Shown here in pieces: positions 704-37,007 of a DNA stretch of 64,000 bases. The notes under the pieces are model-generated. The model was not told the origin of the DNA, made no database searches, and worked only from the letters and a program-made list of their open reading frames with translations. Position 1 is the stretch's first letter; each line of letters starts with the position of its first letter. The translations under genes and the position numbers were made by a program. The DNA lies in the IMG/VR virus record IMGVR_UViG_3300036770_004143, positions 206,076 to 270,075 of that record; one strand, 5' to 3'.

Positions 704-708
704 ATAAT

Positions 709-787: not shown

Positions 788-789
788 AG

Positions 790-6514: not shown

Positions 6515-6554
6515 ATTTTATTTTATATATAAATATTAAGTTTTAAAAGTTTTG

Positions 6555-15564: not shown

Positions 15565-16296
15565 CTAATCTGGCAAACTTGTTCCCCTCTTTAACACAAC
15601 TTTATATGCCATCTTATTTCCTGTTCTTATGGCTTCTATGATGCTTTCATTCTTATATAGGGATAATGCCAAGGCAGCGGTAAAAGTGTCTCCTGCTCCA
15701 CTTATGTCAATGGTGGGGGCATTTTTCTCTTGCATGTAAACTATACCATTATGGGAAACTCCATTACCACCCATTGTTATGATAAACTTCTCTCTATTCT
15801 GATTATTAATCAAATCCTTATTGTTCTCATACTCATCCTGGTTTAGTTTAATATAATCAATGCTATTGATAATATCATCTGTTAATCTCCTCTTGCTATC
15901 CAATATGGTTGTCTTGGATTGCTTTGCTATTTTAACAATATCATCATTAGTCAAATAACCCTTATTGTAATCACTAATAATAGTGATACCATATTTGTTA
16001 TCAATGTCACCATAATAAGAATCAACATTATCCTCACCTGTGTCAACCCTTATAAAAGAATGATTGGTTTTCTCATCAACATACCTCTTCTTCTTTATCT
16101 TATTCTTCTGTGTAATTAACCTTATGCTCACATTTGAATCCATATTAATAACATTATTATATACATTCATAGCCATCCCACCAGCCTTAACCTTATGTGT
16201 TGGAATTAATACCGGAACAGGTGCTTCTGGTGATAACCTTGTGCTTTTTGTGTAAACATATATGTCTCTACAACTTTCTCCTATTACTATAATCAT
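15565..16296 (-). CDS. PfkB sugar kinase, HldE/RfaE kinase-like
   Basis: RLSPEAPVPV, ISDYNKG, DISGAGDTF. Confidence 0.85.
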   Translation of the reverse strand: MIIVIGESCRDIYVYTKSTRLSPEAPVPVLIPTHKVKAGGMAMNVYNNVINMDSNVSIRLITQKNKIKKKRYVDEKTNHSFIRVDTGEDNVDSYYGDIDNKYGITIISDYNKGYLTNDDIVKIAKQSKTTILDSKRRLTDDIINSIDYIKLNQDEYENNKDLINNQNREKFIITMGGNGVSHNGIVYMQEKNAPTIDISGAGDTFTAALALSLYKNESIIEAIRTGNKMAYKVVLKRGTSLPD

Positions 16297-17003
16297 TATC
16301 TATATATTTTTCCTTTTATAAACCCAGGTTTAATCATTTCTCTTAATTCTTCATCTGTATATTTTTCTAATTTTGTACTACCCATATACAACATACCCCC
16401 AACCTTTAAGCCTTTTGGTAATGAGGTTATTTTTATATGTCTTAAATCCAAATTACCACCAACTTTCAATCCTTCTGGTAATGATGTTATTTGTTCACAG
16501 CCAAATAATGACAAATCACGCCCAACTTTAAAACCTTTGGGTAATGAGGTTATCTTTGTATATGATAAATCCAAATTACCCCCAACTTCCAAGCCTTCTG
16601 GTAATGAGGTTATGTTTGAATCATATAAACTCAAATTACCCCCAACTTTCAATCCTTCTGATAATGAAGTTATATTTGTATATTCTAAATTCAAATCCAT
16701 TTTAACTTTTAATCCTTTAGGTAATGAAGTTATGTCTGTGTCGTTCAAACTCAAATGACCCCCAACTTCCAAACCTTCTGGTAATGAGGTTATTTTTGAT
16801 TGTGCTAAATACAAATCACCCCCAACTTTAAAACCTTCTGGTAATGAGGTTATATTTGTATATTCTAAATCCAAATCACCTTCAATGGTTAAATCTTTCT
16901 CTGTTAACGGTATATCATTCATATGTTTCCACAAAAATGGTGCTCTACGCTTCTCCTTCTCTTCAAGGAACTCAAATATTCTTTTTAATTGTTCTTCTTC
17001 CAT
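16296..17003 (-). CDS. LRR paralogue 1
   Basis: 20-21-aa repeats ITSLPEGLKVGGxLxL; shared N-cap LKRIFEFL and C-cap EMIKPGFIKG. Confidence 0.9.
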   Translation of the reverse strand: MEEEQLKRIFEFLEEKEKRRAPFLWKHMNDIPLTEKDLTIEGDLDLEYTNITSLPEGFKVGGDLYLAQSKITSLPEGLEVGGHLSLNDTDITSLPKGLKVKMDLNLEYTNITSLSEGLKVGGNLSLYDSNITSLPEGLEVGGNLDLSYTKITSLPKGFKVGRDLSLFGCEQITSLPEGLKVGGNLDLRHIKITSLPKGLKVGGMLYMGSTKLEKYTDEELREMIKPGFIKGKIYR

Positions 17004-17530
17004 TATCTATATATATTTCCTTTTATAAACCCAGGTTTAATCATGTCTCTTATCTCATCATCTGTGTATTTGGCTAAATTTGTTCCATAAATATACAAAT
17101 ATGTACCAACCTCCAATCCTTTTGGTAATGAAGTTATTTTTGTATGTCTTAAATCCAAATTACCGCCAACTTTCAATCCTTCTGGTAATGATGTTATTTG
17201 TTCACAGCCAAATAACGACAAGTCACGCCCAACTTTAAAACCTTCTGGTAGTGAAGTTATTTTACTATTTTTTAAATATATTATACCATCAACTTTTAAA
17301 CTTTTTGGTAATGAGGTTATGGCTAAACCAATCAAACTCAAGGAACCCCCCACTTCCAATCCTTCTGGCAATGATGTTATTTTTGAACCTTTTAAATTCA
17401 AATTACCTTTAACAATTAATTCTTCTTTTGTTAATGGCATTTCATTCTTAAATTTCCATAAAAATGGTACTTTGTGACCTTCCTTCTCTTCAAGGAACTC
17501 AAATATTCTTTTTAGTTGTTCTTCTTCCAT
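17003..17530 (-). CDS. LRR paralogue 2
   Basis: Same caps and repeats. Confidence 0.9.
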   Translation of the reverse strand: MEEEQLKRIFEFLEEKEGHKVPFLWKFKNEMPLTKEELIVKGNLNLKGSKITSLPEGLEVGGSLSLIGLAITSLPKSLKVDGIIYLKNSKITSLPEGFKVGRDLSLFGCEQITSLPEGLKVGGNLDLRHTKITSLPKGLEVGTYLYIYGTNLAKYTDDEIRDMIKPGFIKGNIYR

Positions 17531-18294
17531 TATCTTACTATTCTTCCGTTTATAAACCCAGGTTTAATCATTTCTCTTAATTCTTCATCATCTAAATCCA
17601 TTGCAAATACACTTGCTCGGATAAATAAATCACCCCCAACTTGCAAACCTTTTGGAATCGGTGTCACATTGGTGTTATATATATTTAAATACCCACCAAC
17701 TTTTAATCCTTCTGGTAATGAAATAGTCCCCAACCCAGTTAAATCCAAATCACCTTTAATATCCAAAGTGTTAGTAATAAAAGTTTTTGAAGTTATTAAT
17801 CCACCAATTTTTAAACCATTTGGTATTTTTGTTAACCTATCTAATTCTGTGTATTTCACAATTAAAATACCCCCAACTTGCAAACCTTTTGGAAGTGATT
17901 CCACTTGTGTATCTGATAAATCCAAAGAACCACCAACTTGCAAATCTTCTGGTAATGAGGTTATGTTTGCATATGATAAAGTTAAATCAACCCCAACTTT
18001 TAATCCCCTTGGTAATGATTTTATAAGACTATGATCCAAATATAGGCTACCACCAACTTCCAAACCTTCTGGTAATGTTTCTATATCTGATTCAGTTAAA
18101 TTCAAATCACCTCCAACTTTCAATCCTTCTGGTAGTGATTCTATATTTGAATCTGAAAAATCCAAATCACCTTTAACATTTAAATCTTCTTCTGTTAATG
18201 GTTGATTATTTATTAACTTCCAAATAAATGGCACTTTATGTTCTCCTTTTCCTTCAAGGAATTCAAATATTCTTTTTAGTTGCTCTTTTTCCAT
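17530..18294 (-). CDS. LRR paralogue 3
   Basis: Same caps; irregular central repeats. Confidence 0.9.
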   Translation of the reverse strand: MEKEQLKRIFEFLEGKGEHKVPFIWKLINNQPLTEEDLNVKGDLDFSDSNIESLPEGLKVGGDLNLTESDIETLPEGLEVGGSLYLDHSLIKSLPRGLKVGVDLTLSYANITSLPEDLQVGGSLDLSDTQVESLPKGLQVGGILIVKYTELDRLTKIPNGLKIGGLITSKTFITNTLDIKGDLDLTGLGTISLPEGLKVGGYLNIYNTNVTPIPKGLQVGGDLFIRASVFAMDLDDEELREMIKPGFINGRIVR

Positions 18295-18297
18295 AAG

Positions 18298-18813
18298 TTA
18301 CTCCCATTCATCATCTATTTCTCCACCCACTTGGCCACCAGTTGATTCAATCTTGTTATATAACTGATCAACTGTATATGATTTGGCAAGTGGAGTATTA
18401 GCAATATAAAAATTATTATAAATGTACAAATTATTTGGCACATTTGTTATTTCATTACATCCCATAATATATAAATTCTGCCCAACATACAAATTGTCTG
18501 GAAGACTTGATATATTAGTATAATCTAAATATAAATCATCTTGAACATATAATCTATCTGGTAGATTTATTAACTCTTTGCAAAAACTCAAGTTCATTGT
18601 ACCCTTAATATATAAGTCATTTGGCAATTTTCTTATATCAGAATTATTTACATCTAAATAACCATCATATACATATCTTTTATCACTTGAATATGCTTCA
18701 AGTTCATCAACCAAATCTTGCTTAAGAATGAAGTTTACCATTCTTATAGGTTGATCCACATTCTCTCTCTCTTTGAGAAATTTGAATATCTTGCTTAATT
18801 GTTCTGCTCTCAT
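18298..18813 (-). CDS. LRR paralogue 4 (divergent)
   Basis: LPDRLYV/LPDNLYV repeats; divergent caps (LSKIFKFL). Confidence 0.85.
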   Translation of the reverse strand: MRAEQLSKIFKFLKERENVDQPIRMVNFILKQDLVDELEAYSSDKRYVYDGYLDVNNSDIRKLPNDLYIKGTMNLSFCKELINLPDRLYVQDDLYLDYTNISSLPDNLYVGQNLYIMGCNEITNVPNNLYIYNNFYIANTPLAKSYTVDQLYNKIESTGGQVGGEIDDEWE

Positions 18814-19508
18814 GGTCTTCTTATTCTTCCTAATACAAATCCAGGTTTTATCATTTCTCTTATTTCATCATCTGTGTATTTTATTGCTATAAACAAATCA
18901 CCCCCAACTGCCAATCCTTTTGGCAATGTTTTTATTGATAACATAGATAAATCCAAGTCTTGGCCAACTTTTAAATCCTCTGGTAATGAGTTTATTTTTG
19001 TGTTATTCAACCACAAGTTGCCCCAAACTACCAATCCTTCTGGTAATGATTCTATTTTTGATTTTATTAAATCCAAACTACCCTGGAGTTTTAAACCTTT
19101 TGGTAATGAAGTTATTTCTGAACCAAGAAGACTCAAATTACGATAAACTTCCAAGCCTTCTGGTAATGAGGTTATTTTTGAATTATTTAAATTTAAATTA
19201 CCCGTAACTTTTAATCCTTTTGGTAATGATTTTATACTTGATGCGTTTAAGTCCAAATCACCCCCAACTTCCAAGCCTTCTGGTAGTGATTTTAAAAATT
19301 TGGTCATATCCAAGTGCAAATCACCATAAACTTTCAAGCCTTCTGGTAATGAGGTTACGTTACTATACGACAAATCCAAATCATCATCAACAATTAATTC
19401 TTCTTTTGTTAATGGTTGATTGTTTATAAACTTCCATCTTAATGGCACTTTATGTTCCCCTTTCCTTTCAAGGAAATCAAATATTCTTTTTAATGCTTCG
19501 TTTTTCAT
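18810..19508 (-). CDS. LRR paralogue 5
   Basis: Same caps and repeats. Confidence 0.9.
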   Translation of the reverse strand: MKNEALKRIFDFLERKGEHKVPLRWKFINNQPLTKEELIVDDDLDLSYSNVTSLPEGLKVYGDLHLDMTKFLKSLPEGLEVGGDLDLNASSIKSLPKGLKVTGNLNLNNSKITSLPEGLEVYRNLSLLGSEITSLPKGLKLQGSLDLIKSKIESLPEGLVVWGNLWLNNTKINSLPEDLKVGQDLDLSMLSIKTLPKGLAVGGDLFIAIKYTDDEIREMIKPGFVLGRIRRP

Positions 19509-19915
19509 TATCCTATTATTTCACCTTTTATAAATCCAGGTTTTATCATTTCTATTATATCCTCATGATAATAATCTTCACTTATGGGTGTTCTATAGAT
19601 ATACAATTTACCACCAACTTTCAAGCCTTTTGGTAGTGAATTTATTAATGAACCAGATAAATCCAAATTACCACCAACTTCCAACCCTTCTGGTAATGAT
19701 TTTATTATTGTTTCATCTAATTCCAAAGTACCCTCAACTTTCAAGCCTTCTGGCAATGATGTTATATTTATATCTGTTAAAATCAAATCACCTTTAACAT
19801 TTAATTCATCTTCTGTTAGTGGTATATTATTTTTCAACTTCCAAATAAATGGTGCTTTATGTTCCCCTTTCCTTTCAAGGAAATCAAATATTCTTTTTAA
19901 TACTTCTTTTTTCAT
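19508..19915 (-). CDS. LRR paralogue 6
   Basis: Short version, about 3 repeats. Confidence 0.9.
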   Translation of the reverse strand: MKKEVLKRIFDFLERKGEHKAPFIWKLKNNIPLTEDELNVKGDLILTDINITSLPEGLKVEGTLELDETIIKSLPEGLEVGGNLDLSGSLINSLPKGLKVGGKLYIYRTPISEDYYHEDIIEMIKPGFIKGEIIG

Positions 19916-20694
19916 TACCTTTTTATTTTTCCTTTTATAAATCCAGGTTGAATCATCTTTCTTAATTTATAAGTAGTAAGTTCATTTAAAGATGAATATT
20001 CCAACATTAAATCTCCAAAAACTTCTAATCCTTTTGGCAATGACTTTATTGTTGTATATTGCAATAATAAATCACCACCAACTTTCAAACCTTCTGGCAA
20101 TGATTTTATTTGCTCGCAACCAAATAATAACAAATCACCCCAAACTTCCAATCCTTCTGGTAATGAAGTTAATTCTTTGCAATATGCTAAATTCAATTTA
20201 CCATTAACTTTCAAATCATCTGGTAATGTTTCTATCTTTGACTCTCGTAAATATAACTCACCACCAACTTCCAATCCTTTTGGTAATGATTTTATACCTG
20301 TATCTAATAAATTTAGAACACCATCAACTTTTAAGCCTTCTGGTAATGATTCTATTTCTGAACGCATTAAATTTAATGATCCAACTTTCAAACTTTTTGG
20401 TAGTGTTTTTATTGACGTATAAGATAAATCCAAATTACCACCAACTTCCAACCCTTCTGGTAAAGAGATTATATTTGACCATTGTAAATTTAAATTACCA
20501 CCAACTTTCAATCCTTTTGGTAATGAGGTTATGTCTTTCATACTCAAATTCAAATCACCTTTAATATCCAAATCTTTCTTTGTTAATGGCTCATTAAAGA
20601 CTATTCTCCATAGTAATGTCCCTTTTGCTTGGTGTGATTTCTTTTCCTTATCTTCAAGAAATTCAAATATTCTTTTTAATGCTTCTTTTTCCAT
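19915..20694 (-). CDS. LRR paralogue 7
   Basis: Longest member, about 9 repeats. Confidence 0.9.
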   Translation of the reverse strand: MEKEALKRIFEFLEDKEKKSHQAKGTLLWRIVFNEPLTKKDLDIKGDLNLSMKDITSLPKGLKVGGNLNLQWSNIISLPEGLEVGGNLDLSYTSIKTLPKSLKVGSLNLMRSEIESLPEGLKVDGVLNLLDTGIKSLPKGLEVGGELYLRESKIETLPDDLKVNGKLNLAYCKELTSLPEGLEVWGDLLLFGCEQIKSLPEGLKVGGDLLLQYTTIKSLPKGLEVFGDLMLEYSSLNELTTYKLRKMIQPGFIKGKIKR

Positions 20695-21233
20695 TATCTT
20701 ATTATTTCCCCTTTTATAAATCCAGGTTTAATCATATCTCTTAATTCTTTATCTATGTATTCTAATAATGCTGTATTTTTAATAATCAACTCACCTTTAA
20801 CTTCCAACCCTTTTGGCAATAAGGTTATCTTTGTTCTTCTTAAATCCAAAGTGCCACCAACTTGCAAACCTTTTGGAAGCAATTCCACTTGTGTATCTGA
20901 TAAATCCAAATCCCTACCAACTTGCAAATCTTCTGGTAATGAGGTTATGTTTGAACCTTCCAAATATATATCACGTCTAACATATAAATCACTTGGTAAT
21001 GATTTTAATTTAGGTGTATAAGATAAATTCAAATTGCCACCAATTTTTAAACCTTCTGGTAAGTAGGGTATATCTGAATGTTCTAAAAACAAACCACCTT
21101 TAATATCCAAATCTTCCTTTGTTAATGGCTCATTAAATTCAATTTTCCATCTCAAAGTTCCTTTTACTTTGGCCAATTTATTTTCCTTCTCTTCAAGGAA
21201 TTCAAATATTCTTTTTAGTTGTTCTTTTTGCAT
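20694..21233 (-). CDS. LRR paralogue 8
   Basis: Same caps and repeats. Confidence 0.9.
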   Translation of the reverse strand: MQKEQLKRIFEFLEEKENKLAKVKGTLRWKIEFNEPLTKEDLDIKGGLFLEHSDIPYLPEGLKIGGNLNLSYTPKLKSLPSDLYVRRDIYLEGSNITSLPEDLQVGRDLDLSDTQVELLPKGLQVGGTLDLRRTKITLLPKGLEVKGELIIKNTALLEYIDKELRDMIKPGFIKGEIIR

Positions 21234-21700
21234 TATTTATGTATTTTTCCTTTCACAAATCCAGGTTTTATCATTTCTAATAATTCATAACGTTCATATT
21301 TCATCATTGTTGTCAATTCCAAATGTAAATCACCACCAACTTCCAATCCTTTTGGTAATGATTTTATATCTGTATATGTTAAATCCAAATCACCACCAAC
21401 TTTTAACCCTTCTGGTAATGATTCTATTATTGAGCCTTCCAAGTATATATCACCTTTAACATCTAAATCACTTGGTAATGATTTTAATTTAGGTGTATAA
21501 GATAAATTCAAATCACCAGCAACTTTCAAACCTTCTGGTAAGGATTTTATTTTTGAAAATGCTAAATTCAAATCACTTGTAACATTTAAATCTTCCTTTA
21601 CTATTGGCTCATTATTTACTAATTTCCATTTAAATGGTGTTTTATGTTCTCCCTTCCTTTCAAGGAAATCAAATATTCTTTTTAATGCTTCTTTTTCCAT
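21233..21700 (-). CDS. LRR paralogue 9
   Basis: Same caps and repeats. Confidence 0.9.
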   Translation of the reverse strand: MEKEALKRIFDFLERKGEHKTPFKWKLVNNEPIVKEDLNVTSDLNLAFSKIKSLPEGLKVAGDLNLSYTPKLKSLPSDLDVKGDIYLEGSIIESLPEGLKVGGDLDLTYTDIKSLPKGLEVGGDLHLELTTMMKYERYELLEMIKPGFVKGKIHK

Positions 21701-22170
21701 TATCTATATATTTCTCCTTTTATAAACCCAGGTTTAATCATTTCTCTTAATTCATCATCTGTGTATTTTGTTAATGGTGTATAACGAATATTCAAATCAC
21801 CATCAACATATAAACTTTCTGGTAATGAGGTTATGTTATTACAATAAGCTAAATTCAAACCACCACCAACTTTCAAACCTTCTGGTAATGATGTTATTCT
21901 GGTATGAAGTAAATTTAATGCTCCACCAACTTTTAATCCTTTTGGTAATGAATTTAATTTTTCAGAATATGATAAAACCAAATCACCACTAACTTTCAAT
22001 CCTTCTGGTAATGAGGTTATCTTTGAATCAAATAAATACAAACGACCCTTAATATTTAATTCTTCTTTTGTGAATGGTATTTCACATTTGACTTTAAATA
22101 TAAACGGCACTTTATGTTTTTCCTTCTCTTCAAGGAATTCAAATATTCTTTTTAGTTGTTCTTTTTTCAT
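21700..22170 (-). CDS. LRR paralogue 10 (first gene of array 1)
   Basis: Same caps; ATATTTAT at 22187-22194 upstream. Confidence 0.9.
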   Translation of the reverse strand: MKKEQLKRIFEFLEEKEKHKVPFIFKVKCEIPFTKEELNIKGRLYLFDSKITSLPEGLKVSGDLVLSYSEKLNSLPKGLKVGGALNLLHTRITSLPEGLKVGGGLNLAYCNNITSLPESLYVDGDLNIRYTPLTKYTDDELREMIKPGFIKGEIYR

Positions 22171-22262
22171 TATAAAATTTATTACAATAAATATACAAAA
22201 TAAAAAAACCCCTAGACTAATCCAAGAGTTTTTTTAAATTTAAAAAATGTCCAAGAAGATTA

Positions 22263-23282
22263 TTAGTTTTTGTCCTTCAATAAGAACTTATTGCTAATGG
22301 CTTTAAATGAAATAACATTGTCAGATGTCCTAATTACAATACCTTCTCTTTCTGTTTTTTCATTCAAGGATGACTTACCTTCGGCAAACTTCAATAACTC
22401 ATCAATTGTTTTTGGCAAATCTGTTCCAGCCCTAATTGATAAGAGTGGTGCAACCTCCAACTGGTTCTGGGCCATAAACATAGCAAACTCTGCGTAATTA
22501 AACCTTTTGTGAGCATCAATGTCAAATGCTGTAAAGAACCTAACTGTATGACCTTTTATCTTGTAGCGATTTCCCTGGATGCCCTCACCAATCAACTCAC
22601 CTTGTATTGCAAAGTTCTTGTTTTTGGCTCTCATCTTGTTCTCCAAATCAAGTTCCCTTGCAACCTTCCAGAAAGTATTCCCCTCTGTTTCCAATAGTTC
22701 AAGATTTCTTGAACAAACCCCAAACTCACCATTGTTTATGTAGAATGTTGCAGAGGATCCATCCAGTTTTTCTGTTATATAGAAATCATCATTTGATTCT
22801 ATATATGTCTTATAATCATTTGGAATATTCTGGGCTCTAATTTCATCTGTCTTGGAAATGAAGGATGGAAACATTCCTTTTGCCAGCCCAGAAAGTTCAG
22901 GTGAAATTGGTGTTTCATACTTCACAATACCCAACATTTCTGTCACATCCATACCCTCTTCAAGAGATATTTCAGAACCTAAAACAGAAATAGGCAATAT
23001 CAACCCCTGGGAGATTTGCCCCCTCATTTTTATAGTTCTCAATCGAAAACCCTCTGCTTCAGTTGATTTCCTATATGAAGATTTCCTTAAAAATTCAAAC
23101 TCTTCCCTAATGGGTAAGAAGGAATCAATCTCACAATACACAATGAAATCACCCACCTTATGTTCAACATTCTTGGCAACAACAACTTGCCATCCATCAA
23201 CAATGGCTAGTTCAATGTTGTCAGCACCTTCAATAGGCTTTAAATCTGATATTTTTCTAACGCTTGCAAGTTTCCTTTCCAT
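22263..23282 (-). CDS. ATP-dependent RNA ligase (DRB0094/Rnl family)
   Basis: N-terminal OB-like domain, EKLDGSS motif I, QGELIG, EREGIV, FKAISNKFL. Confidence 0.9.
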   Translation of the reverse strand: MERKLASVRKISDLKPIEGADNIELAIVDGWQVVVAKNVEHKVGDFIVYCEIDSFLPIREEFEFLRKSSYRKSTEAEGFRLRTIKMRGQISQGLILPISVLGSEISLEEGMDVTEMLGIVKYETPISPELSGLAKGMFPSFISKTDEIRAQNIPNDYKTYIESNDDFYITEKLDGSSATFYINNGEFGVCSRNLELLETEGNTFWKVARELDLENKMRAKNKNFAIQGELIGEGIQGNRYKIKGHTVRFFTAFDIDAHKRFNYAEFAMFMAQNQLEVAPLLSIRAGTDLPKTIDELLKFAEGKSSLNEKTEREGIVIRTSDNVISFKAISNKFLLKDKN

Positions 23283-23307
23283 TATTATTTTTTTTTGTTT
23301 AGTTAAT

Positions 23308-23343
23308 AATCCCCCCTACCCAGGCATTTGAGTAGGGGGTTTT
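23308..23343 (-). terminator. intrinsic terminator
   Basis: CCCCCTAC/GTAGGGGG inverted repeat directly after the 23346 gene. Confidence 0.6.
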
Positions 23344-23345
23344 AA

Positions 23346-23612
23346 TCAATCTACTAAAGTTTCAATCTTTGATTTGTTGATTATATGATCTGTGATTGTA
23401 TAATCCTCCACTTTTGTCAAGATGACACATTTGGATAAAATCTTATAAGGAACATTGATTAAGAAATCATTTCCATTATAGAACTGGAGGGTATTCTTTA
23501 ACTGTAAGGATCCGTGTATAGATTTTAGGAATAACTTGAACTGTGTCTTATCAACAAAATTCTCATTGATTAAATTCTCATTCTTGTAAATTACTCTAAT
23601 GTTATGTGTCAT
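23346..23612 (-). CDS. hypothetical protein
   Basis: 88-aa ORF below a promoter. Confidence 0.7.
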   Translation of the reverse strand: MTHNIRVIYKNENLINENFVDKTQFKLFLKSIHGSLQLKNTLQFYNGNDFLINVPYKILSKCVILTKVEDYTITDHIINKSKIETLVD

Positions 23613-23634
23613 AGTCTTGTTTTTTTTGTTGATG

Positions 23635-23666
23635 CAAATTTAAAGTAAAAGATTGAATTAACCAAA
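23635..23666 (-). promoter_or_regulatory. Bacteroidota sigma70 promoter
   Basis: TTTG-N20-TAAATTTG. Confidence 0.75.
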
Positions 23667-23685
23667 TATTTTTTTCATTATTTTC

Positions 23686-23772
23686 TGGGTTAGGTCATCA
23701 TCATAGCCACACATTGACCTTTCTTATCAGAAGCCCTATTGGCAGGCTACTCCTGGAAGTGTGGTTCACCCA
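23686..23772 (-). ncRNA. candidate pseudoknotted RNA
   Basis: TGGGT/ACCCA closing stem, AGGTCA/TGACCT, TTCT-GATA-AGAA, AGCC/GGCT; CCACAC/GTGTGG cross-pairing. Confidence 0.35.
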
Positions 23773-23788
23773 TTGATTCTTTTTAACA

Positions 23789-24124
23789 CTAGATTACATA
23801 CTCTGGAATTCTTTCAATTGAATCATCTATTGTATCCAATAACCCATCACAATATACATCTTTGATTTCTTTCTTAACTCTTCCAAGAGTATTCACCAAA
23901 TACACATCATACAAATCACTACCATTTAATGTAATTAAAACCCAGCCTTTGTGCCTACGGGCAGACACTCTTAAAAGCAAACCCTTGTTGCTTAAATTTA
24001 TTGTTTTTGACACACCAAAAGACCAGAACACAGGTTGATTATATGTGAGCCAACCCATTGTTTCCTGTGGGTTAAATTCTAATTTGTCTTCAAGTAAAGG
24101 TTTGATTGCTGTTATGATTTTCAT
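23789..24124 (-). CDS. conserved hypothetical early protein
   Basis: FWSFG...HKGWVLITLNGSDLYDVYL. Confidence 0.75.
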   Translation of the reverse strand: MKIITAIKPLLEDKLEFNPQETMGWLTYNQPVFWSFGVSKTINLSNKGLLLRVSARRHKGWVLITLNGSDLYDVYLVNTLGRVKKEIKDVYCDGLLDTIDDSIERIPEYVI

Positions 24125-24143
24125 GTTGGTTGTTTTGTTGATG

Positions 24144-24175
24144 CAAATTTAATACAAAGAAATGAATTGACCAAA
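24144..24175 (-). promoter_or_regulatory. Bacteroidota sigma70 promoter
   Basis: TTTG-N20-TAAATTTG. Confidence 0.75.
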
Positions 24176-24180
24176 TTTTT

Positions 24181-24423
24181 CTACACCAATTCTGGTTGAT
24201 TTTTTCTAAACCCATCCCAATGGTTTCTAACCCTCTCACAAGCATATGGGTAAGATCCGCCCCTATTGATGACCATATGCATTCCTGTTTCACCAAACAT
24301 CCACCACTGGAATTCTGACTCATGTTCGCTAGCAACACAGTATAATTTACAATTATTGCCCCATGCCCACAATACACCTACTGATTCAATTTCTCTTTCT
24401 TTTTCTCTAACTTCTGTTCTCAT
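24181..24423 (-). CDS. hypothetical protein (MRTEVRE...)
   Basis: Start reassigned to ATG 24423. Confidence 0.55.
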   Translation of the reverse strand: MRTEVREKEREIESVGVLWAWGNNCKLYCVASEHESEFQWWMFGETGMHMVINRGGSYPYACERVRNHWDGFRKNQPELV

Positions 24424-24445
24424 TTTAATTTTGTTTAGTTTGGTT

Positions 24446-24580
24446 TTAAAGTATTTTCCAAGAATATGTAGTATAACTATTACGAAGAAACCTATCACAT
24501 TCTTTTTTTGTCTTGAACTCACGCACAAACACCCTGCCTGTCTTTTTTTCTGTCAATTCTAACACTTGCGGCTTTCTCAT
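24446..24580 (-). CDS. 44-aa basic microprotein
   Basis: MRKPQVLELTEKKTGRVFVREFKTKKECDRFLRNSYTTYSWKIL directly below a promoter. Confidence 0.5.
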   Translation of the reverse strand: MRKPQVLELTEKKTGRVFVREFKTKKECDRFLRNSYTTYSWKIL

Positions 24581-24603
24581 AGTGGTTGGTTGTTTTGTTG
24601 ATG

Positions 24604-24635
24604 CAAATTTACAGCAAATAATTCAAACCACCAAA
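24604..24635 (-). promoter_or_regulatory. Bacteroidota sigma70 promoter
   Basis: TTTG-N20-TAAATTTG. Confidence 0.75.
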
Positions 24636-24671
24636 TCTTTTTTTCAAAAAAATAGTATTTATGGTAAAAAA

Positions 24672-25565
24672 ATGAAAAAGTTTATAACATTTATTTTATT
24701 AACTATTGTAATACAGAGTTGTAACACATTATCCCACACGAAAAAGACATATGTCCACCAGTTTGCAACCTCAACCAAGGATTTACCAAAGTATTCCTTA
24801 AAGTTCAACCAAACATTATCCAATGTGAGGAAAAGTAGGGGTGTATATTTTGCCAATACATTATCAACACCATCATTACACCTAACAGAATTAGATAGCA
24901 TATACGCACAACAAAAATTGGATGAAAGAAAAACCATTTTATTTCAAAACTCATTTGAAATTCTTAATACATACTCAAAAATATTATTGGCCTTATCATC
25001 AGATGTTTATGTTGATGATTTATATAACAATATAAAAGAACTTGAATATGATTTAGAATCCTTAATAAACCTAAATAATAAATTAACATCATTTAACACT
25101 CCAACCGGTTTCGTAAATATAGGGGCTAAAATAGGAGTAGTTTCTGGAAGAATTTATATAAACCAAAAACAAAGTAAAGAGATAAAAATATTATTAAATT
25201 CTTCTGACACATTAATAACAAATGTATCAAATAATATTATTTCATATTTGGATTCTAAAAACTTAAATGCTATCATTGATAATGAAGATAAGATGTTATC
25301 AATAAACTACTTGAGTTATATACAACAATCAAATAGAACTAGTATTTATACTGATTTGGATTATATCAAATTAAAATCAGATTTATCTAGCATAAAAGAA
25401 TTAAAAGATAATTTAATTATTTGTATGATTAATTTAAGAGATTCTCATAAAATAATGGTGGAAGAAATTAATAAAAAAAATTCAACTATTGATACTATAA
25501 ATGAAATAAAAGAATTAGCAAAAACCATAGTTGAAATAAACCAAATAATTAAAGAATTAAAATAA
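24672..25565 (+). CDS. helical lipoprotein
   Basis: MKKFITFILLTIVIQSC lipobox; start reassigned from 24513. Confidence 0.7.
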   Translation: MKKFITFILLTIVIQSCNTLSHTKKTYVHQFATSTKDLPKYSLKFNQTLSNVRKSRGVYFANTLSTPSLHLTELDSIYAQQKLDERKTILFQNSFEILNTYSKILLALSSDVYVDDLYNNIKELEYDLESLINLNNKLTSFNTPTGFVNIGAKIGVVSGRIYINQKQSKEIKILLNSSDTLITNVSNNIISYLDSKNLNAIIDNEDKMLSINYLSYIQQSNRTSIYTDLDYIKLKSDLSSIKELKDNLIICMINLRDSHKIMVEEINKKNSTIDTINEIKELAKTIVEINQIIKELK

Positions 25566-25566
25566 T

Positions 25567-25863
25567 ATGGAATACCTGTTAAAAGAAATACATACTTCAA
25601 TTACAAATGTTGAAAATGAAAGATATAATGAGAATTTATCCAAGGTAGAAAAAACTCATCTTGAAAATACTTTATTAACATTAAGAAATATGGAGAGATC
25701 TATCATTAATAAAAAAAATGATGATATGCTCCAAGAATTATCTACCATCACACCATCCCTAACTAAACTAATAAATGAAATGGAATCATCTGGGGAAAGA
25801 CTTAATGAACTGAATATAAAACTAAAACGCTTAATCAATATTATCAACTTTTTAAAATTCTAA
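25567..25863 (+). CDS. coiled-coil hypothetical protein
   Basis: 98-aa ORF. Confidence 0.65.
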   Translation: MEYLLKEIHTSITNVENERYNENLSKVEKTHLENTLLTLRNMERSIINKKNDDMLQELSTITPSLTKLINEMESSGERLNELNIKLKRLINIINFLKF

Positions 25864-25865
25864 AA

Positions 25866-26120
25866 ATGGATCAGTATATTAAAATCATTGGCTTTATTGC
25901 CACAATCATCACAATCACATCTTTCACATTTAAGGACATTCTAACCATTAGACTAGTTAATGTTTTAGGGTCATTTGTTTGGCTTGTGTATGGCTTTTAT
26001 ACAAAAGACCACCCAATAATCATTGTGAATTTAAGTGTTGTTATAATCCAAGTATGGGGCATATTTTTCTTGTTAAAAGATAGAATGTTTCCACCTCCAA
26101 ACAAAAATCAAATTCTTTAG
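25866..26120 (+). CDS. three-TM small membrane protein (YgjV/PQ-loop-like)
   Basis: IRLVNVLGSFVWLVYG...PIIIVN. Confidence 0.65.
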   Translation: MDQYIKIIGFIATIITITSFTFKDILTIRLVNVLGSFVWLVYGFYTKDHPIIIVNLSVVIIQVWGIFFLLKDRMFPPPNKNQIL

Positions 26121-26129
26121 ATGGGTTTT

Positions 26130-26159
26130 TCACAGAGGGAAATTGATTTCCCTCTGTGA
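26130..26159. terminator. perfect 14-bp inverted repeat between convergent genes
   Basis: TCACAGAGGGAAAT-TG-ATTTCCCTCTGTGA. Confidence 0.7.
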
Positions 26160-26194
26160 GCATAAAATGTTGATTATTAGTATAGTTAGGAGTC

Positions 26195-26608
26195 TTAAAA
26201 GTAATGAATCCTCTTTAAATACCCATCATCTCCAACCATATTTCTCAATTCACTATTACTATATTCACCTAATGGTGATGTATCAATGTATAAAGTGCCA
26301 CCAACTTTCAATCCTTCAGGTAATGAGTGTAAGTTGTAACAATTTTGTAAAATCAAATTACCTCTAACTATTAACCCTTCTGGTAATGAACTTATATTAT
26401 CACAAAAACTTAAAATCAAATCACCACTAACTTCCAATCCTTCTGGTAGTGATTCTATATTTGAATATGTCAAATCCAAATCACCTTCAATATCTAAATC
26501 TTTTTCTGTTAATGGTATTTCATTTTTCCATTTCCATAAGAATGGTGGATTGTGTTCTTCCTTTTCTTCAAGGAATTCAAATATTCTTTTTAATGCTTCT
26601 TTTTTCAT
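26195..26608 (-). CDS. LRR paralogue 11
   Basis: Same N-cap and repeats; variant C-cap. Confidence 0.9.
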   Translation of the reverse strand: MKKEALKRIFEFLEEKEEHNPPFLWKWKNEIPLTEKDLDIEGDLDLTYSNIESLPEGLEVSGDLILSFCDNISSLPEGLIVRGNLILQNCYNLHSLPEGLKVGGTLYIDTSPLGEYSNSELRNMVGDDGYLKRIHYF

Positions 26609-27255
26609 TATCTAAATATTCCTCCTTTTATAAATCCAGGTTTAACCATTTCTCTTAATTGATTATCTGAATATTCTTCTAATGCCGTACCTAATATAAA
26701 TAGGTGTTCACCAATTTCTAATCCTTTTGGTAATGAGGTTATTTTTGTGCCTGATAAATCCAAATGCTCACTAACTGTAAGTCCTTGGGGTAATGATTTT
26801 AATGTTGTACAACTATTTAAAGCAAGATAACCATCAACCTTTAAACCTTTTGGTAAAGATTGTATTTTTGAAAAAGCCAAATCAATACTCCCATTAACCT
26901 CCAAATCTTTTGGCAGTATCTCAATGGATGTGTATGATAAAATTAAATCTTCTTCAACTACCAATCCTTTTGGTAAATATTTTATGCTTGAATATGATAA
27001 ATTGAAATGTTCTCCAACTTCCAATCCTTCTGGTAATGATTCTATTTTTGAAGCATATAAACTTAAATTACCCCCAACCTTCAACCCTTTTGGTAATGAG
27101 GTAATTTCTGATCCTTCAAAAATTAAATCCCCTTTAACATTTAACTCTTCTTTTGTTAATGGTATATTATTAATCAATTTCCATTTAACTGGTAGATTAT
27201 ACCCTTCCTTCTCTTTTAGGAATTCAAATATTCTTTTTAAGGTTTCTTTTTTCAT
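26608..27255 (-). CDS. LRR paralogue 12
   Basis: Same caps and repeats. Confidence 0.9.
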   Translation of the reverse strand: MKKETLKRIFEFLKEKEGYNLPVKWKLINNIPLTKEELNVKGDLIFEGSEITSLPKGLKVGGNLSLYASKIESLPEGLEVGEHFNLSYSSIKYLPKGLVVEEDLILSYTSIEILPKDLEVNGSIDLAFSKIQSLPKGLKVDGYLALNSCTTLKSLPQGLTVSEHLDLSGTKITSLPKGLEIGEHLFILGTALEEYSDNQLREMVKPGFIKGGIFR

Positions 27256-27263
27256 ATCATATA

Positions 27264-27734
27264 TTAATTATCATCATCTTCTTCATAATCATCTTCATCT
27301 TCATAATCATAATCAATGTAATATTCAGAAATTATATCACCTTTTATAAAACCAGGTTCAATTGATTTTCTTAAATGATCATCATTTTTATAGTAATAAG
27401 GTAGTTCAGATTCAGTTACATCTAAATGCCCCCCAACTTTCAATCCTTTTGGTAATGAAGTTATGCTTGTTCTTACTAAAAATAAACTATCACCAATTTC
27501 CAATCCTTCTGGTAGTGATTTTATTTTTGAACGAGATAAATCTAACCAACCACTAATTTTCAAGCCTTTTGGTAATGAGGTAATTTTTCTATCCTGTAAA
27601 TCCAAATCACCTTTAATATTTAATTCTTCTTCTGTTAATGGCTCACCATTTTCCCATTTCCACAAGAATGGAGTATTATGTTCTCCCTTCTTTTCAAGGA
27701 ACTCAAATATTCTTTTTAATGCTTCTTTTTCCAT
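27264..27734 (-). CDS. LRR paralogue 13 with acidic tail
   Basis: Same caps; ends YDYEDEDDYEEDDDN. Confidence 0.9.
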   Translation of the reverse strand: MEKEALKRIFEFLEKKGEHNTPFLWKWENGEPLTEEELNIKGDLDLQDRKITSLPKGLKISGWLDLSRSKIKSLPEGLEIGDSLFLVRTSITSLPKGLKVGGHLDVTESELPYYYKNDDHLRKSIEPGFIKGDIISEYYIDYDYEDEDDYEEDDDN

Positions 27735-28636
27735 TATTTTCTATTTGTTTTCTCACCCTCTATTCTTACAGATATTTTTGGTTTATACCCTTTTGGCAAT
27801 CTATTATCTATTCCAACAAATTCCCCCATTTCATTATCCATTCTAATAGTAATTTCTCTCTTATCCAAATTCATCATTATCTGCCCCACAGTCTGCATAT
27901 TATACATATTCTTCATTCTATAAGGATTCAAGAACTTATTTTTCTTATATTGTTCTTTCATCTTATCAATAACATCTTGATCCTTTTGAGCATCTTGCAA
28001 ATGCTTTTTGGCCAACTCCAATCTTGAATGGGATGACTTCTTCTTTATGCCATAAATATAACCTGTTTTTTTGTGTACTATGCCATGATTGGTTCTTACC
28101 TCAACCTTATCATCACCCATCTTTGTTATGACCGGAGTGTCCTTACTTGTGAGTTCAATAATATATATATTCTTTGGGCTTCCAACAATTGTCTGCCCCT
28201 TAATTCCAACATTCTTTGGATCATCTGCGTCATAAGATATGATTGATTTAATCACATCTTTTAAATTCCTAAAACTTAATGCTCTACGTATTTTCTTACC
28301 ATCATTGGAGTTCTTAACTTTCTTGGACTTGAATACTTTATTACTTTCCTTCTCATCTTGCCTAACCAATAGACTTGAATTAACTATTCCAATACCGTAT
28401 TCATTCATTCCCTCGGACCAGTCTGTTTCTGTATCTCTCCAATACATAACCTCAACATCATCCACAATCTCATGGACAATTTCCATCTTTGCCAAATAAC
28501 CCCTATCCCTGTTTTTGGCTATAACATTCCCATCATCTAATCTAACAGCAGCAATTGTGCATTCTTGGATTAGCCTTTGTTCATCTAAAATATTTACTTG
28601 ACTTTCAGTAAGCAAAATGAATTTATTATCTTTCAT
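27734..28636 (-). CDS. Ntn-hydrolase-like protein (C45/NRDE-like) with 25-aa leader
   Basis: LIQE-CTIAAV...IAKNRDR...SEGMNEYGIGIVNSSL...RTNHG. Confidence 0.6.
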   Translation of the reverse strand: MKDNKFILLTESQVNILDEQRLIQECTIAAVRLDDGNVIAKNRDRGYLAKMEIVHEIVDDVEVMYWRDTETDWSEGMNEYGIGIVNSSLLVRQDEKESNKVFKSKKVKNSNDGKKIRRALSFRNLKDVIKSIISYDADDPKNVGIKGQTIVGSPKNIYIIELTSKDTPVITKMGDDKVEVRTNHGIVHKKTGYIYGIKKKSSHSRLELAKKHLQDAQKDQDVIDKMKEQYKKNKFLNPYRMKNMYNMQTVGQIMMNLDKREITIRMDNEMGEFVGIDNRLPKGYKPKISVRIEGEKTNRK

Positions 28637-28655: not shown

Positions 28656-29072
28656 TCAAGACAATGATTTAATCAAACTCATCATCTTATCATCTATATA
28701 TAACCCACTTAATTCTTCATAGGTAAAATAGCCACATTCTGTATGCTCATCACCATCCATAGCATTCTCCAAATCTGGAACTAATTTCTTATCTGGGCTG
28801 TCTAATAAGAACACATTGAACCTACCATTTATCTTGCTACCATCTCTTGAATATCTATCAATGGATGCAATAGGTGTTAGTTTCCTATTTGTTATATGAA
28901 TATTAGTTTCCTCATAGAACTCCCTTTTAGCACCTTCATGTGTTGTTTCAAATGTTTCCAATTTCCCAGCAGGAACTGACCACATTCCAGGCAAACTATT
29001 GCTCTTTGGACTTCTCTTGCAAAGTAGAAACTCCTTATTGTGTCTTACTAATACACCAACATACTCTCTCAT
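28656..29072 (-). CDS. NUDIX hydrolase
   Basis: GKLETFETTHEGAKREFYEETNI Nudix box. Confidence 0.9.
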   Translation of the reverse strand: MREYVGVLVRHNKEFLLCKRSPKSNSLPGMWSVPAGKLETFETTHEGAKREFYEETNIHITNRKLTPIASIDRYSRDGSKINGRFNVFLLDSPDKKLVPDLENAMDGDEHTECGYFTYEELSGLYIDDKMMSLIKSLS

Positions 29073-36971: not shown

Positions 36972-37007
36972 ATTTTTTGTTTTTTCTTTTTGGTTAATTT
37001 GATGTTG

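What the first reader, a model, noticed from the sequence alone, without database searches (positions are those of the whole stretch)
16296..27734. Thirteen-member LRR repertoire with fixed caps and a hypervariable binding face
Seen: ten tandem genes (16296-22170) and three more (26195-27734) mostly share an N-cap (MEKEALKRIFEFLEEKE..H..PF.WK...PLT.EDL) and a C-cap (DEELREMIKPGFIKG.I.R) around roughly 3-9 repeats of 20-21 aa. The SLP(E/K)GL(K/E)VGG half is nearly invariant while x positions of xLxLxxxx vary from repeat to repeat. Most junctions overlap as TAATG. Known: those x positions form the concave ligand-binding face of LRR solenoids, as in lamprey VLRs. Inference: this is a diversified panel of binders, most plausibly inhibitors or decoys of host defence proteins. 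The FLEE-containing N-cap and upstream late-type motif raise the possibility of virion packaging and injection, like the variable T4 internal proteins.
Basis: partly seen in the sequence, partly recalled or inferred. Interest (0 to 1): 0.8.

Follow-up and report, generated by a model that had tools for sequence, protein, structure and literature searches.

The report
Jumbo-phage family of capped LRR binders
A 270-kb uncultured freshwater phage, probably of Bacteroidota, carries at least 39 small leucine-rich-repeat proteins (13 in this window) whose scaffold is conserved while one face and the gene number change fast, which fits a panel of protein binders aimed at changing host targets, though no target or function has been shown.

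Summary
Thirteen minus-strand genes (16296-22170 and 26195-27734) encode 135-259 aa proteins. Each has a helical N-cap, 3-10 repeats of 20-21 aa and a KPGFIKG-type C-cap; 8 of 11 internal junctions read TAATG. AlphaFold gives a confident LRR solenoid (pLDDT 93). The nearest solved structure is Vibrio FlrP.

The window shows only part of the family. The same 270-kb IMG/VR contig holds at least 39 members at five sites, and I found 215 distinct capped genes in related viral contigs. No capped member turned up in 185,579 cellular genomes.

Positions 13, 15, 17 and 18 of the repeat carry most of the variation. Across 51 ortholog pairs their dN is 4.4-9.2 times that of the scaffold. Their dN/dS is 0.88 (0.65-1.13), so positive selection is not shown.

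Copy number differs at syntenic loci: 3 versus 6 genes in a relative whose four nearest flanking proteins are 96-100% identical, and 10 versus 6 in a more distant one. Neighbouring paralogs exchange repeat blocks.

A diversified binder panel is the best reading. The anti-defence role is plausible but untested. The virion-packaging idea has no support here.

The parts
21700..22170 (-). g10, first gene of the 10-gene array; 156 aa capped LRR protein with 4 HMM repeats
   Evidence: AlphaFold model from alignment A1: pLDDT 93.1, pTM 0.85.
21233..21700 (-). g09, 155 aa capped LRR protein
   Evidence: TAATG junctions on both sides.
20694..21233 (-). g08, 179 aa capped LRR protein; its N-cap has a 4-aa insertion
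19915..20694 (-). g07, 259 aa capped LRR protein with 10 repeats, the longest in the window
19508..19915 (-). g06, 135 aa capped LRR protein with 3-4 repeats, the shortest in the window
18810..19508 (-). g05, 232 aa capped LRR protein with 9 repeats; overlaps g04 by 4 nt (ATGA)
18298..18813 (-). g04, 171 aa member of a divergent subfamily: same N-cap helix, LPDNLYV-type repeats, variant C-cap
   Evidence: Alignment A2 with nine relatives from other arrays. 37% identity to g10.
17530..18294 (-). g03, 254 aa capped LRR protein with some irregular repeats (22-23 aa)
17003..17530 (-). g02, 175 aa capped LRR protein
16296..17003 (-). g01, 235 aa capped LRR protein with 9 repeats, last gene of the array; TAATG junction with the downstream pfkB gene
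   Evidence: PDB sequence hit 8z5u_0 at E=9.2e-26.
27264..27734 (-). g13, 156 aa capped LRR protein with an added acidic, Tyr-rich C-terminal tail; TAATG junction with the upstream C45-like gene
   Evidence: Ortholog in L019 is 98.7% identical.
26608..27255 (-). g12, 215 aa capped LRR protein
   Evidence: Ortholog in L019 is 99.5% identical.
26195..26608 (-). g11, 137 aa LRR protein with a degenerate C-cap, last gene of the 3-gene cluster
   Evidence: Ortholog in L019 is 93.4% identical.
16413..16556 (-). 144-nt tract in g01 (about 2.4 repeats) that is 93% identical to 17120-17263 in g02, while the flanks are 57-70% identical: a gene-conversion or segmental-exchange tract
   Evidence: (family D4).
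17120..17263 (-). Partner tract in g02 of the g01/g02 exchange
22201..22236 (-). Terminator-like hairpin with a T-run between the RNA ligase gene and g10, followed by an AT-rich leader
27734..28636 (-). C45-family acyltransferase/hydrolase-like gene, translationally coupled to g13; it sits directly upstream of LRR arrays in three lineages
15565..16296 (-). pfkB-family kinase gene, translationally coupled to g01

Best explanation
The 13 genes belong to a multigene family that evolves by gene gain and loss. The family has at least 39 members, about 21 kb or roughly 8% of a 270-kb jumbo-phage genome. Each member is a small, soluble, capped LRR solenoid with no signal peptide or membrane segment in its N-terminal sequence.

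Shown:
- The fold, and a conserved hydrophobic, Gly and Pro scaffold.
- Fast change at four positions per repeat that flank the LxL strand. About 55% of the residues there are Asp, Asn, Tyr or Ser.
- Whole-repeat length steps, gain and loss of whole genes at syntenic sites, and exchange of repeat blocks between neighbouring paralogs.
- Polycistronic, translationally coupled arrays that sit among non-structural genes.

Inferred: the proteins are made inside the infected cell from these operons. Each binds a different protein target through its variable face. The targets are variable host factors, with defence or takeover targets the leading candidates. The size and turnover of the panel would then reflect tracking of diverse hosts or strains. 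On this reading the caps are structural end-caps of the solenoid.
For: Fold:
- AlphaFold pLDDT 93.1, pTM 0.85.
- Best PDB matches are 8z5u_0 FlrP (E=9.2e-26 by sequence, TM 0.57), then the SspH1, SlrP and IpaH LRR domains.

Variable face:
- Entropy is 3.25-3.84 bits at positions 13, 15, 17 and 18, against 2.25 bits or less elsewhere, over 948 repeats.
- dN/dS is 0.88 at the x positions and 0.14 at the scaffold in 51 independent ortholog pairs.
- Net charge runs from -16 to +8 among the 39 paralogs, which points to different targets.

Turnover:
- 39 distinct members at five sites of one contig.
- 3 versus 6 genes between the C45-like and YgjV-like genes in L019, where the four nearest flanking proteins are 96-100% identical. 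10 versus 6 genes after the RNA ligase in L054.
- Protein lengths fall into steps of 20-21 aa.
- A 144-nt exchange tract between g01 and g02.

The family is functional, not decaying:
- 215 distinct intact capped ORFs, with purifying selection on the scaffold.

Restricted to phages:
- Atlas clusters are 97-100% viral.
- No capped member among 185,579 cellular genomes.

Non-structural context:
- The arrays are coupled to pfkB kinase and C45-like genes and lie next to RNA ligase, NUDIX, phosphoesterase and tRNA genes.
- The Edno5 homolog lies in the early-left operon between the CI repressor and exo/RecT.
Against: - No target, binding event, expression timing or phenotype is known.
- dN/dS at the x positions does not exceed 1, so relaxed constraint on exposed residues could explain the pattern without adaptive diversification.
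- RNA runs hold only 5-9% of the sampled words, so expression is not shown.
- No host-type promoter lies within 400 nt upstream of any of 24 array starts examined, so the expression class is unknown.
- The assignment of the x positions to the concave face rests on LRR precedent. I could not inspect model coordinates.
- There is no similarity to known anti-defence or defence models.
Confidence: 0.45

Rival explanations
1. Virion-associated proteins. The conserved caps dock the LRR modules onto a common site on the particle. The modules would either be fibre or capsid decorations that recognise varied host surface structures, or packaged proteins that are injected, like T4 internal proteins.
For: - LRR or beta-helix modules have been proposed as host-recognition elements on the Goslar virion.
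- Faces rich in Asp, Asn, Tyr and Ser also suit carbohydrate binding.
- Tail-fibre-like genes lie in the same window at 57-64 kb.
- Virion proteins need no signal peptide.
Against: - The arrays are translationally coupled to metabolic and non-structural genes, not to structural ones.
- The Edno5 homolog is in an early operon.
- The N-cap is predicted as part of the fold, with invariant buried-type residues, rather than as a cleavable targeting peptide.
- Neither cap occurs on any non-LRR ORF in the DNA held.
- No late-promoter motif is enriched.
Confidence: 0.18
2. Substrate adaptors. The conserved N-cap and C-cap act as a shared handle for one phage or host effector, such as a protease, a modifying enzyme or a chaperone. 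The variable LRR face selects the substrates, as in poxvirus ANK/PRANC proteins or IpaH LRR-NEL proteins.
For: - About a dozen cap residues are invariant or nearly so across 68 sequences.
- A C45-family hydrolase-like gene sits directly upstream of arrays in three lineages.
- The phage encodes its own full-length DnaJ.
- The same repeat class is fused to other domains, such as PcfJ and amidoligase, in cellular proteins.
Against: - The caps as a whole evolve fast: dN/dS is 0.93 for the N-cap and 0.65 for the C-cap.
- The conserved cap residues are mostly hydrophobic, Gly or Pro, as expected for plain capping.
- The g04 subfamily and g11 have altered C-caps.
- No partner has been identified.
Confidence: 0.15
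3. Structural spacers or scaffolds inside the cell or envelope. By analogy with FlrP, which binds the flagellar rod, the family would have little target diversity and its variation would be neutral drift of exposed residues.
For: - The closest solved relative, FlrP, is a structural spacer.
- dN/dS at the x positions is compatible with neutrality.
Against: - FlrP has a Sec signal and is a single gene. These proteins have no signal-like N-terminus in their sequences and number at least 39 per genome.
- Gene content at syntenic loci turns over quickly. Charge spans -16 to +8. Both are hard to reconcile with one structural role.
Confidence: 0.07
4. DNA or nucleic-acid mimicry or binding by a charged solenoid, as in pentapeptide-repeat or Ocr-type mimics.
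For: - Some members are strongly acidic: net charge -16 for g13 with its acidic tail, and -14 for g03.
- The variable face is rich in Asp and Asn.
Against: Other paralogs are basic, up to +8 with pI 9.4, so the property is not shared by the family.
Confidence: 0.05

Closest known systems
Vibrio FlrP (PDB 8Z5U, 8Z5W, 8Z60; bioRxiv 10.64898/2025.12.04.692373)
   Same: It has the same 20-aa repeat class (LP.GL.V.G.L.L...I) and a beta-solenoid LRR core. It is the best hit by sequence (E=9.2e-26) and by fold (TM 0.57).
   Different: FlrP has a Sec signal and is periplasmic. It is a single-copy bacterial protein that binds the polar flagellar rod as a spacer. It lacks the helical N-cap and the KPGFIKG C-cap.
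LRR domains of bacterial type III effectors (SspH1, SspH2, SlrP, IpaH)
   Same: They have short bacterial-type LRRs of about 20 residues that bind host proteins. Weak but consistent sequence hits were found. From my own knowledge, these domains also have an alpha-helical N-cap.
   Different: The phage proteins have no NEL E3-ligase domain and no secretion signal. Scores are far below the family cut-offs (36 bits against 1113 for SlrP). They are phage proteins of 135-259 aa.
Lamprey variable lymphocyte receptors
   Same: In both, a capped LRR solenoid keeps its scaffold constant while diversity sits at the x positions of the beta-strand face. Diversity also arises from changes in repeat number and from transfer of repeat blocks.
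   Different: VLR caps are disulfide-bonded LRRNT and LRRCT modules, and VLRs are assembled somatically from cassettes and secreted (my own knowledge). Here the caps are helical with no cysteine framework, every copy is a complete germline gene, and exchange is seen only on an evolutionary timescale.
Repeat-protein multigene families of large eukaryotic viruses (entomopoxvirus LRR gene family, poxvirus ankyrin/PRANC, giant-virus LRR, ANK and FNIP expansions)
   Same: These are dozens of paralogous repeat proteins in tandem arrays, with copy number differing between relatives and a presumed role in host interaction. Entomopoxvirus and giant-virus LRR proteins appear among the distant fold matches.
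   Different: Those are viruses of eukaryotes, with unrelated repeat subtypes and often an F-box or PRANC handle. I found no description of such an expansion in a phage in the literature searched.
Edwardsiella phage Edno5 gene Edno5_0047, PHROGs 21719 and 2028, and UniProt 'Leucine-rich repeat [uncultured Caudovirales phage]' entries
   Same: They share the repeat class. Edno5 is 42.7% identical over 96% of g01. The BFVD models A0A6J7X9U5 and A0A6J5LZF9 are the best viral fold matches. All are annotated as of unknown function.
   Different: Edno5 has a single copy with nearly identical repeats and an unrelated C-terminal domain of about 80 aa in place of the C-cap. No multigene array has been described for these entries.
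T4 internal proteins (IPI-III)
   Same: They are small, variable phage proteins that have been proposed or shown to counter host defence.
   Different: Internal proteins carry a short N-terminal capsid-targeting sequence that the prohead protease cleaves, and they are not LRR proteins (my own knowledge). Here the N-terminus is a predicted structural cap. Packaging was not tested.

Membership tests
Leucine-rich repeat superfamily (bacterial-type short LRR, FlrP / DUF5649-like) | Tandem repeats of 20-30 aa with an LxxLxLxx(N/T/C)xL-type conserved segment | tested here: met
   The repeats are 20-21 aa with the consensus I-T-S-L-P-E/K-G-L-K/E-V-G-G-x-L-x-L-x-x-T/S/C-x. There is one extra residue between the V and the LxL compared with the canonical spacing.
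Leucine-rich repeat superfamily (bacterial-type short LRR, FlrP / DUF5649-like) | Solenoid fold with one strand ladder per repeat | tested here: met
   The AlphaFold model has pLDDT 93.1 and shows regular short strands in each repeat. Foldseek's best PDB hits are all LRR proteins, with 8z5u_0 first.
Leucine-rich repeat superfamily (bacterial-type short LRR, FlrP / DUF5649-like) | Score above the Pfam gathering threshold for an LRR model | tested here: not met
   The best score is LRR_4 at 23.3 bits against a cut-off of 27, and DUF5649 at 20.9 against 25. The curated models under-represent this subtype. The phmmer hit to the solved LRR protein FlrP is highly significant.
Lamprey VLR-type adaptive receptors | Cysteine-rich LRRNT and LRRCT caps | tested here: not met
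   The caps are helical and have no conserved cysteines. The paralogs carry 0-3 Cys in total.
Lamprey VLR-type adaptive receptors | Somatic assembly of an incomplete gene from flanking cassettes | tested here: not met
   All 13 window copies are complete ORFs with both ends. The locus is identical in three metagenomes.
T4-type internal (injected) proteins | Short N-terminal capsid-targeting sequence that the prohead protease removes | tested here: inconclusive
   IxE and LxE tripeptides occur in the N-cap helix (IFE, LEE). That helix is predicted to be part of the fold and carries the invariant residues I9 and F12. No protease or cleavage data exist.
T4-type internal (injected) proteins | Presence in purified virions | not testable with these tools
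   The phage is uncultured and no proteome exists. The RNA and DNA runs say nothing about particle content.
IpaH / SspH / SlrP NEL effectors | C-terminal NEL E3-ligase domain after the LRR | tested here: not met
   The proteins end 25-30 aa after the last repeat. No NEL hit was found, and scores are far below the equivalog cut-offs.
Diversity-generating retroelement targets | A nearby reverse transcriptase, a template/variable repeat pair and adenine-specific changes | tested here: not met
   None of the roughly 40 window ORFs that I scanned against Pfam, including about 30 of the larger non-LRR ones, is a reverse transcriptase. Not every ORF was scanned. Population variants are mostly C/T and G/A transitions with no adenine bias.
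Known anti-phage defence or anti-defence protein families | Match to a curated model | tested here: not met
   The LRR proteins have no PADLOC hit. The PHROGs matched are of unknown function.

The most novel reading that the evidence does not exclude
A clade of freshwater jumbo phages maintains a germline recognition repertoire of about 40 capped LRR binders. It diversifies by gene gain and loss, by steps in repeat number and by exchange of repeat cassettes between paralogs. It would work as a broad counter-defence or host-takeover library, the viral counterpart of LRR-based immune repertoires such as VLRs and plant NLRs. That would make it the first large repeat-protein multigene family with an arms-race role described in a bacteriophage.
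Probability: 0.25. Interest if true: 0.85.

Novelty: new variant of a known kind. Interest (0 to 1): 0.6.

Why it matters
Large paralog families of repeat proteins are typical of poxviruses and giant viruses, where they mediate host interaction. The papers I could search do not report them for phages. Here a phage gives roughly 8% of its genome to one family of small, well-folded LRR modules that turn over quickly between close relatives.

If these modules are binders of host proteins, they offer three things:
- a natural library of compact, probably cytoplasmic and cysteine-poor binding scaffolds (135-260 aa);
- a way to find which Bacteroidota host factors or defences matter to jumbo phages;
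- a model for how phages widen or shift host range by gene-family turnover rather than by changes in receptor-binding proteins alone.

If they prove to be neutral or structural, the family still defines a new, widespread, phage-restricted capped LRR architecture that current Pfam and PHROG models do not name.

Tried and rejected
1. Nucleotide search of 16 kb against GenBank phages found nothing. The fibre and RNA-ligase proteins have only distant cultured relatives, so no cultured model or host record exists.

2. Synteny through the pfkB neighbour. Relatives at 38-43% identity carry no LRR genes near it.

3. Reads from four other metagenomes laid on the array. Logan contigs there are only about 200-800 nt long and paralogs cross-map, so the many 'joints' cannot be read as copy-number variants. 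The 31 listed codon variants (19 nonsynonymous, 12 synonymous) show no clear enrichment at the x positions.

4. RNA evidence. RNA runs hold only 5-9% of the words, which is inconclusive.

5. Late-type promoter. TTATATTTATA-like motifs lie 15-30 nt upstream of several array starts but are not enriched in the window: 22 found against 15 expected. The sigma-70 scan was below chance.

6. Host-type Bacteroidota promoters are enriched in the window (18 against 5.8 expected) but absent upstream of 24 array starts.

7. An exact degenerate C-cap DNA pattern was too strict to count all copies.

8. A feature search with the N-cap alone gave only low scores of 0.73 or less.

9. DGR, DNA mimicry, NEL effector and a VLR-like somatic system were considered and rejected (see the membership tests and rivals).

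10. Literature searches found no paper on phage LRR arrays. The survey by Matsushima et al. 2021 is not held.

Full report
OBSERVATION

On the minus strand there are ten contiguous ORFs (16296-22170) and three more (26195-27734), encoding proteins of 135-259 aa. Twelve start with M(E/K)KE.LKRIF(E/D)FLE..., continue through a ...PF.WK...PLT.E(D/E)L segment, and end with ...(E/D)(L/I)R(E/D)MIKPGFIKG.I.R. The gene at 18298-18813 belongs to a divergent subfamily. It has the same N-terminal helix, LPDNLYVGG-type repeats and a variant C-cap, and it recurs inside arrays of related phages.

A repeat HMM finds 3-10 units per capped protein, 20 aa each and occasionally 21. The unit reads I-T-S-L-P-(E/K)-G-L-(K/E)-V-G-G-x-L-x-L-x-x-(T/S/C)-x. 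In the window the entropy is 2.95-3.68 bits at positions 13, 15, 17 and 18, and 1 bit or less at the scaffold positions. The same pattern holds for 948 repeats from 215 distinct genes: 3.25-3.84 bits against 2.25 or less.

Eight of the 11 internal junctions are the one-base overlap TAATG. The same junction links g13 to the upstream gene and g01 to the downstream gene. In related loci 95 of 168 distinct junctions are TAATG.

WHAT THE GENOME IS

The window is the last 64 kb of IMG/VR contig UViG_3300036770_004143 (270,075 bp). The region is identical, or differs by one base in 20.7 kb, in contigs from two other metagenomes. The window has about 30% G+C and 8 tRNA genes. It also encodes an RNA ligase, NUDIX, three metallophosphoesterases, an HD-domain protein (which also gives a weak match to a tRNA-nucleotidyltransferase PHROG), a primase, an SbcC-like protein, its own sigma-70-family factor and a full-length DnaJ.

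It has no close cultured relative. Near-identical sequence occurs in subsurface, runoff, wastewater, river and other freshwater metagenomes from many studies.

A Bacteroidota host is likely but not proven. Promoters of the form TTTG-N17-21-TAnnTTTG occur 18 times against 5.8 expected, and no shuffle reached that count; that this motif is the Bacteroidota promoter type is from my own knowledge. Fibre-region proteins carry SprB-repeat and Fib_succ_major domains.

THE FAMILY IS MUCH LARGER THAN THE WINDOW SHOWS

Searching viral contigs with an alignment of 156-aa members returned 68 loci. Five of them lie on the same 270-kb contig. Across the roughly 145 kb of that contig that I held, there are 39 distinct family ORFs (13 + 8 + 2 + 7 + 9). 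Thirty-six have both caps, and together they code for 20.9 kb.

Related contigs gave 215 distinct capped genes whose lengths fall into steps of 20-21 aa. The word-indexed protein search gave 2,584 hits, and 112 of the top 120 carry both caps. Atlas clusters are 97-100% viral.

In 185,579 representative cellular genomes only the repeat core is found, inside long proteins of Chlamydiae symbionts, Aquimarina and others. The capped form never appears. A profile search over 1.84 billion representatives found 8,921 proteins with the repeat class. Most are long and multidomain, and some are PcfJ fusions.

In the held DNA, every ORF that matches the N-cap model also contains repeats. The caps are therefore LRR end-caps, not a portable signal.

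STRUCTURE

AlphaFold2 on g10 with 67 homologs gives pLDDT 93.1 and pTM 0.85. The model has two N-terminal helices (residues 3-15 and 23-28), a solenoid with two short strands per repeat (at K-V and at L-x-L), two short C-terminal helices and a final strand pair.

The best solved match by sequence (E=9.2e-26) and by fold (TM 0.57) is chain 0 of 8Z5U. This is Vibrio FlrP, a Sec-exported LRR protein that binds the polar flagellar rod. Next come the LRR domains of SspH1, SlrP and IpaH.

By LRR precedent the variable x positions flank the LxL strand and should line one face of the solenoid. I could not inspect coordinates, so this step is inference.

HOW IT EVOLVES

Paralogs within the genome are 47-63% identical, and their DNA is 60-83% identical. 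The family is therefore old.

I compared 51 independent ortholog pairs from different contigs (88-99% nucleotide identity) by Nei-Gojobori counts, using a pooled dS of 0.063:

| Site class | dN/dS | 95% CI |
|---|---|---|
| x positions (13, 15, 17, 18) | 0.88 | 0.65-1.13 |
| Scaffold | 0.14 | 0.09-0.20 |
| Other repeat positions | 0.46 | 0.35-0.57 |
| N-cap | 0.93 | 0.72-1.18 |
| C-cap | 0.65 | 0.47-0.89 |
| All sites | 0.58 | not computed |

So there is a 4.4- to 9.2-fold excess of amino-acid change at the x positions over the scaffold. Omega does not exceed 1, so diversifying selection is not demonstrated. The caps are also not 'fixed' beyond about a dozen residues.

Gene content changes quickly. 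Between the C45-like gene and the YgjV-like gene the window has 3 LRR genes. Contig L019, whose four nearest flanking proteins are 96-100% identical (NUDIX, one gene further out, 88%), has 6. Three of those are orthologs at 93-99.5% identity. The other three are only 45-64% identical to anything in the window. After the RNA ligase the window has 10 genes and L054 has 6.

Adjacent g01 and g02 share a 144-nt tract, about 2.4 repeats including their x residues. It is 93% identical, with 57-70% identity on either side, which is the signature of gene conversion or segmental exchange. One population variant replaces six adjacent bases and turns K-M into the consensus G-G.

FUNCTION

Nothing has been measured, so this section is inference. 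Several points favour intracellular binders:
- The N-termini are acidic and helical, with no signal peptide or membrane segment.
- The arrays are polycistronic and translationally coupled to a pfkB kinase gene and a C45-like hydrolase gene. They lie among RNA-repair and nucleotide genes rather than structural genes.
- The one homolog in a cultured phage, Edno5_0047, lies in the early-left operon between the CI repressor and exo/RecT. From my own knowledge, this is where lambdoid phages keep accessory host-interaction genes.
- About 55% of the residues on the variable face are Asp, Asn, Tyr or Ser.
- Net charge among the paralogs spans -16 to +8, which argues for different targets and against one shared property such as DNA mimicry.

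I therefore rank a diversified panel of protein binders against variable host factors first, at about 0.45. Counter-defence is the leading specific role, but only by context. The other readings rank as follows:

| Reading | Confidence |
|---|---|
| Virion decoration or injection | about 0.18 |
| Caps as a shared handle for one effector | about 0.15 |
| FlrP-like structural role | about 0.07 |
| Nucleic-acid mimicry | about 0.05 |

The 'FLEE' segment lies in a predicted structural helix with invariant I9 and F12. An AT-rich TTATATTTATA-like motif does recur upstream of several arrays, but it is not enriched in the window and cannot be assigned to a late class. No host-type promoter precedes any of 24 array starts, and the phage has its own sigma factor. 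The expression class therefore remains open. RNA runs were uninformative.

COMPARISON AND NOVELTY

These proteins are members of the LRR superfamily, of the short bacterial FlrP/DUF5649-like subtype. The repeat and the fold pass the membership tests; the Pfam gathering scores do not. They are not VLRs, NEL effectors, DGR targets or known defence-related families (see the membership tests).

The closest analogy in how they may work is the repeat-protein multigene families of poxviruses and giant viruses. Databases already label single phage proteins of this type 'leucine-rich repeat' or place them in unknown-function PHROGs. I found no paper that describes a capped family, tandem arrays or a 39-member expansion in a phage.

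I rate it a new variant of a known kind, with interest 0.6. The anatomy and the evolutionary dynamics are solid and unusual for a phage, but the function is untested and positive selection is not shown.

Noticed in passing
window 23617-23677, 24126-24186, 24586-24646 (minus strand), plus 15 other sites listed: Bacteroidota-type promoters (TTTG, 17-21 nt, TAnnTTTG, often TATCTTTG or TAAATTTG) are enriched: 18 against 5.8 expected. Three sit in 61-nt repeated cassettes in front of small genes between the two LRR clusters. This points to a Bacteroidota host and marks probable early genes.
   Followed up: partly
window 46477-47277 (-): A phage-encoded sigma-70-family protein with regions 2 and 4. 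It implies phage-specific promoters, which might drive the LRR arrays.
   Followed up: no
window 37506-38402 (-): A full-length DnaJ/Hsp40 (J domain, zinc-finger domain and C-terminal domain) encoded by the phage.
   Followed up: no
window 264-860, 2670-2842, 6554-6640; 22263-23282; 41809-43188; 14134-14868, 29084-29785, 51036-51857; 28656-29072: An RNA-repair and nucleotide toolkit surrounds the arrays: eight tRNA genes, an RNA ligase with a PHA02142 OB domain, an HD-domain protein with a weak tRNA-nucleotidyltransferase PHROG match, three metallophosphoesterases and a NUDIX hydrolase.
   Followed up: partly
window 27734-28636 (-): A C45-family autoproteolytic acyltransferase/hydrolase-like gene lies directly upstream of an LRR array and is TAATG-coupled to it. 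The same arrangement is seen in the window, L019 and L081.
   Followed up: partly
window 27264-27330 (-), C-terminus of g13: g13 carries an extra tail of about 20 aa after its C-cap, made almost entirely of Asp, Glu and Tyr. It is conserved in the L019 ortholog.
   Followed up: no
window 57319-63755 (-): A fibre-like gene block carries a SprB repeat, a Fib_succ_major domain, and SPRY plus DUF7483 plus glycine-rich domains. The DUF7483 protein is 37-44% identical to virion or fibre proteins of Pelagibacter, Roseobacter, Methylophilales and Synechococcus phages.
   Followed up: partly
window 26130-26157: A perfect 12-bp stem hairpin (CACAGAGGGAAA...TTTCCCTCTGTG) lies between the convergent g11 and the plus-strand YgjV-like gene. 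It is probably a bidirectional terminator.
   Followed up: no
window 24513-26120 (+): A small opposite-strand block separates the two LRR clusters. It encodes a 350-aa protein with a hydrophobic N-terminal segment and no family match, a 98-aa protein and an 84-aa PQ-loop/YgjV-like membrane protein.
   Followed up: no
window 16698-16703 (g01 codons 101-102): In one runoff metagenome six adjacent bases differ, changing K-M to the consensus G-G at repeat positions 11-12. This looks like a short conversion tract rather than point mutations.
   Followed up: partly
window 40732-41784 (-) and 36219-37010 (-): The first is an EF-hand/dockerin-like calcium-binding protein. The second is a DUF932 protein. 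Neither has an evident link to the LRR family.
   Followed up: no
L017 8609, L023 8150, L028 10001, L032 7669, L036 6381, L045 9480, L054 8528; window 22172-22200: An AT-rich motif resembling TTATATTTATAAT lies 15-30 nt upstream of the first start codon of many arrays. It is not enriched in the window as a whole, so its role (phage promoter or translation-initiation region) is open.
   Followed up: partly
L090 (MAG labelled Promethearchaeota, 3.1-kb contig): Three small tandem ORFs with the same repeat class sit on a short contig binned to an archaeal MAG. This is probably a mis-binned phage fragment.
   Followed up: no
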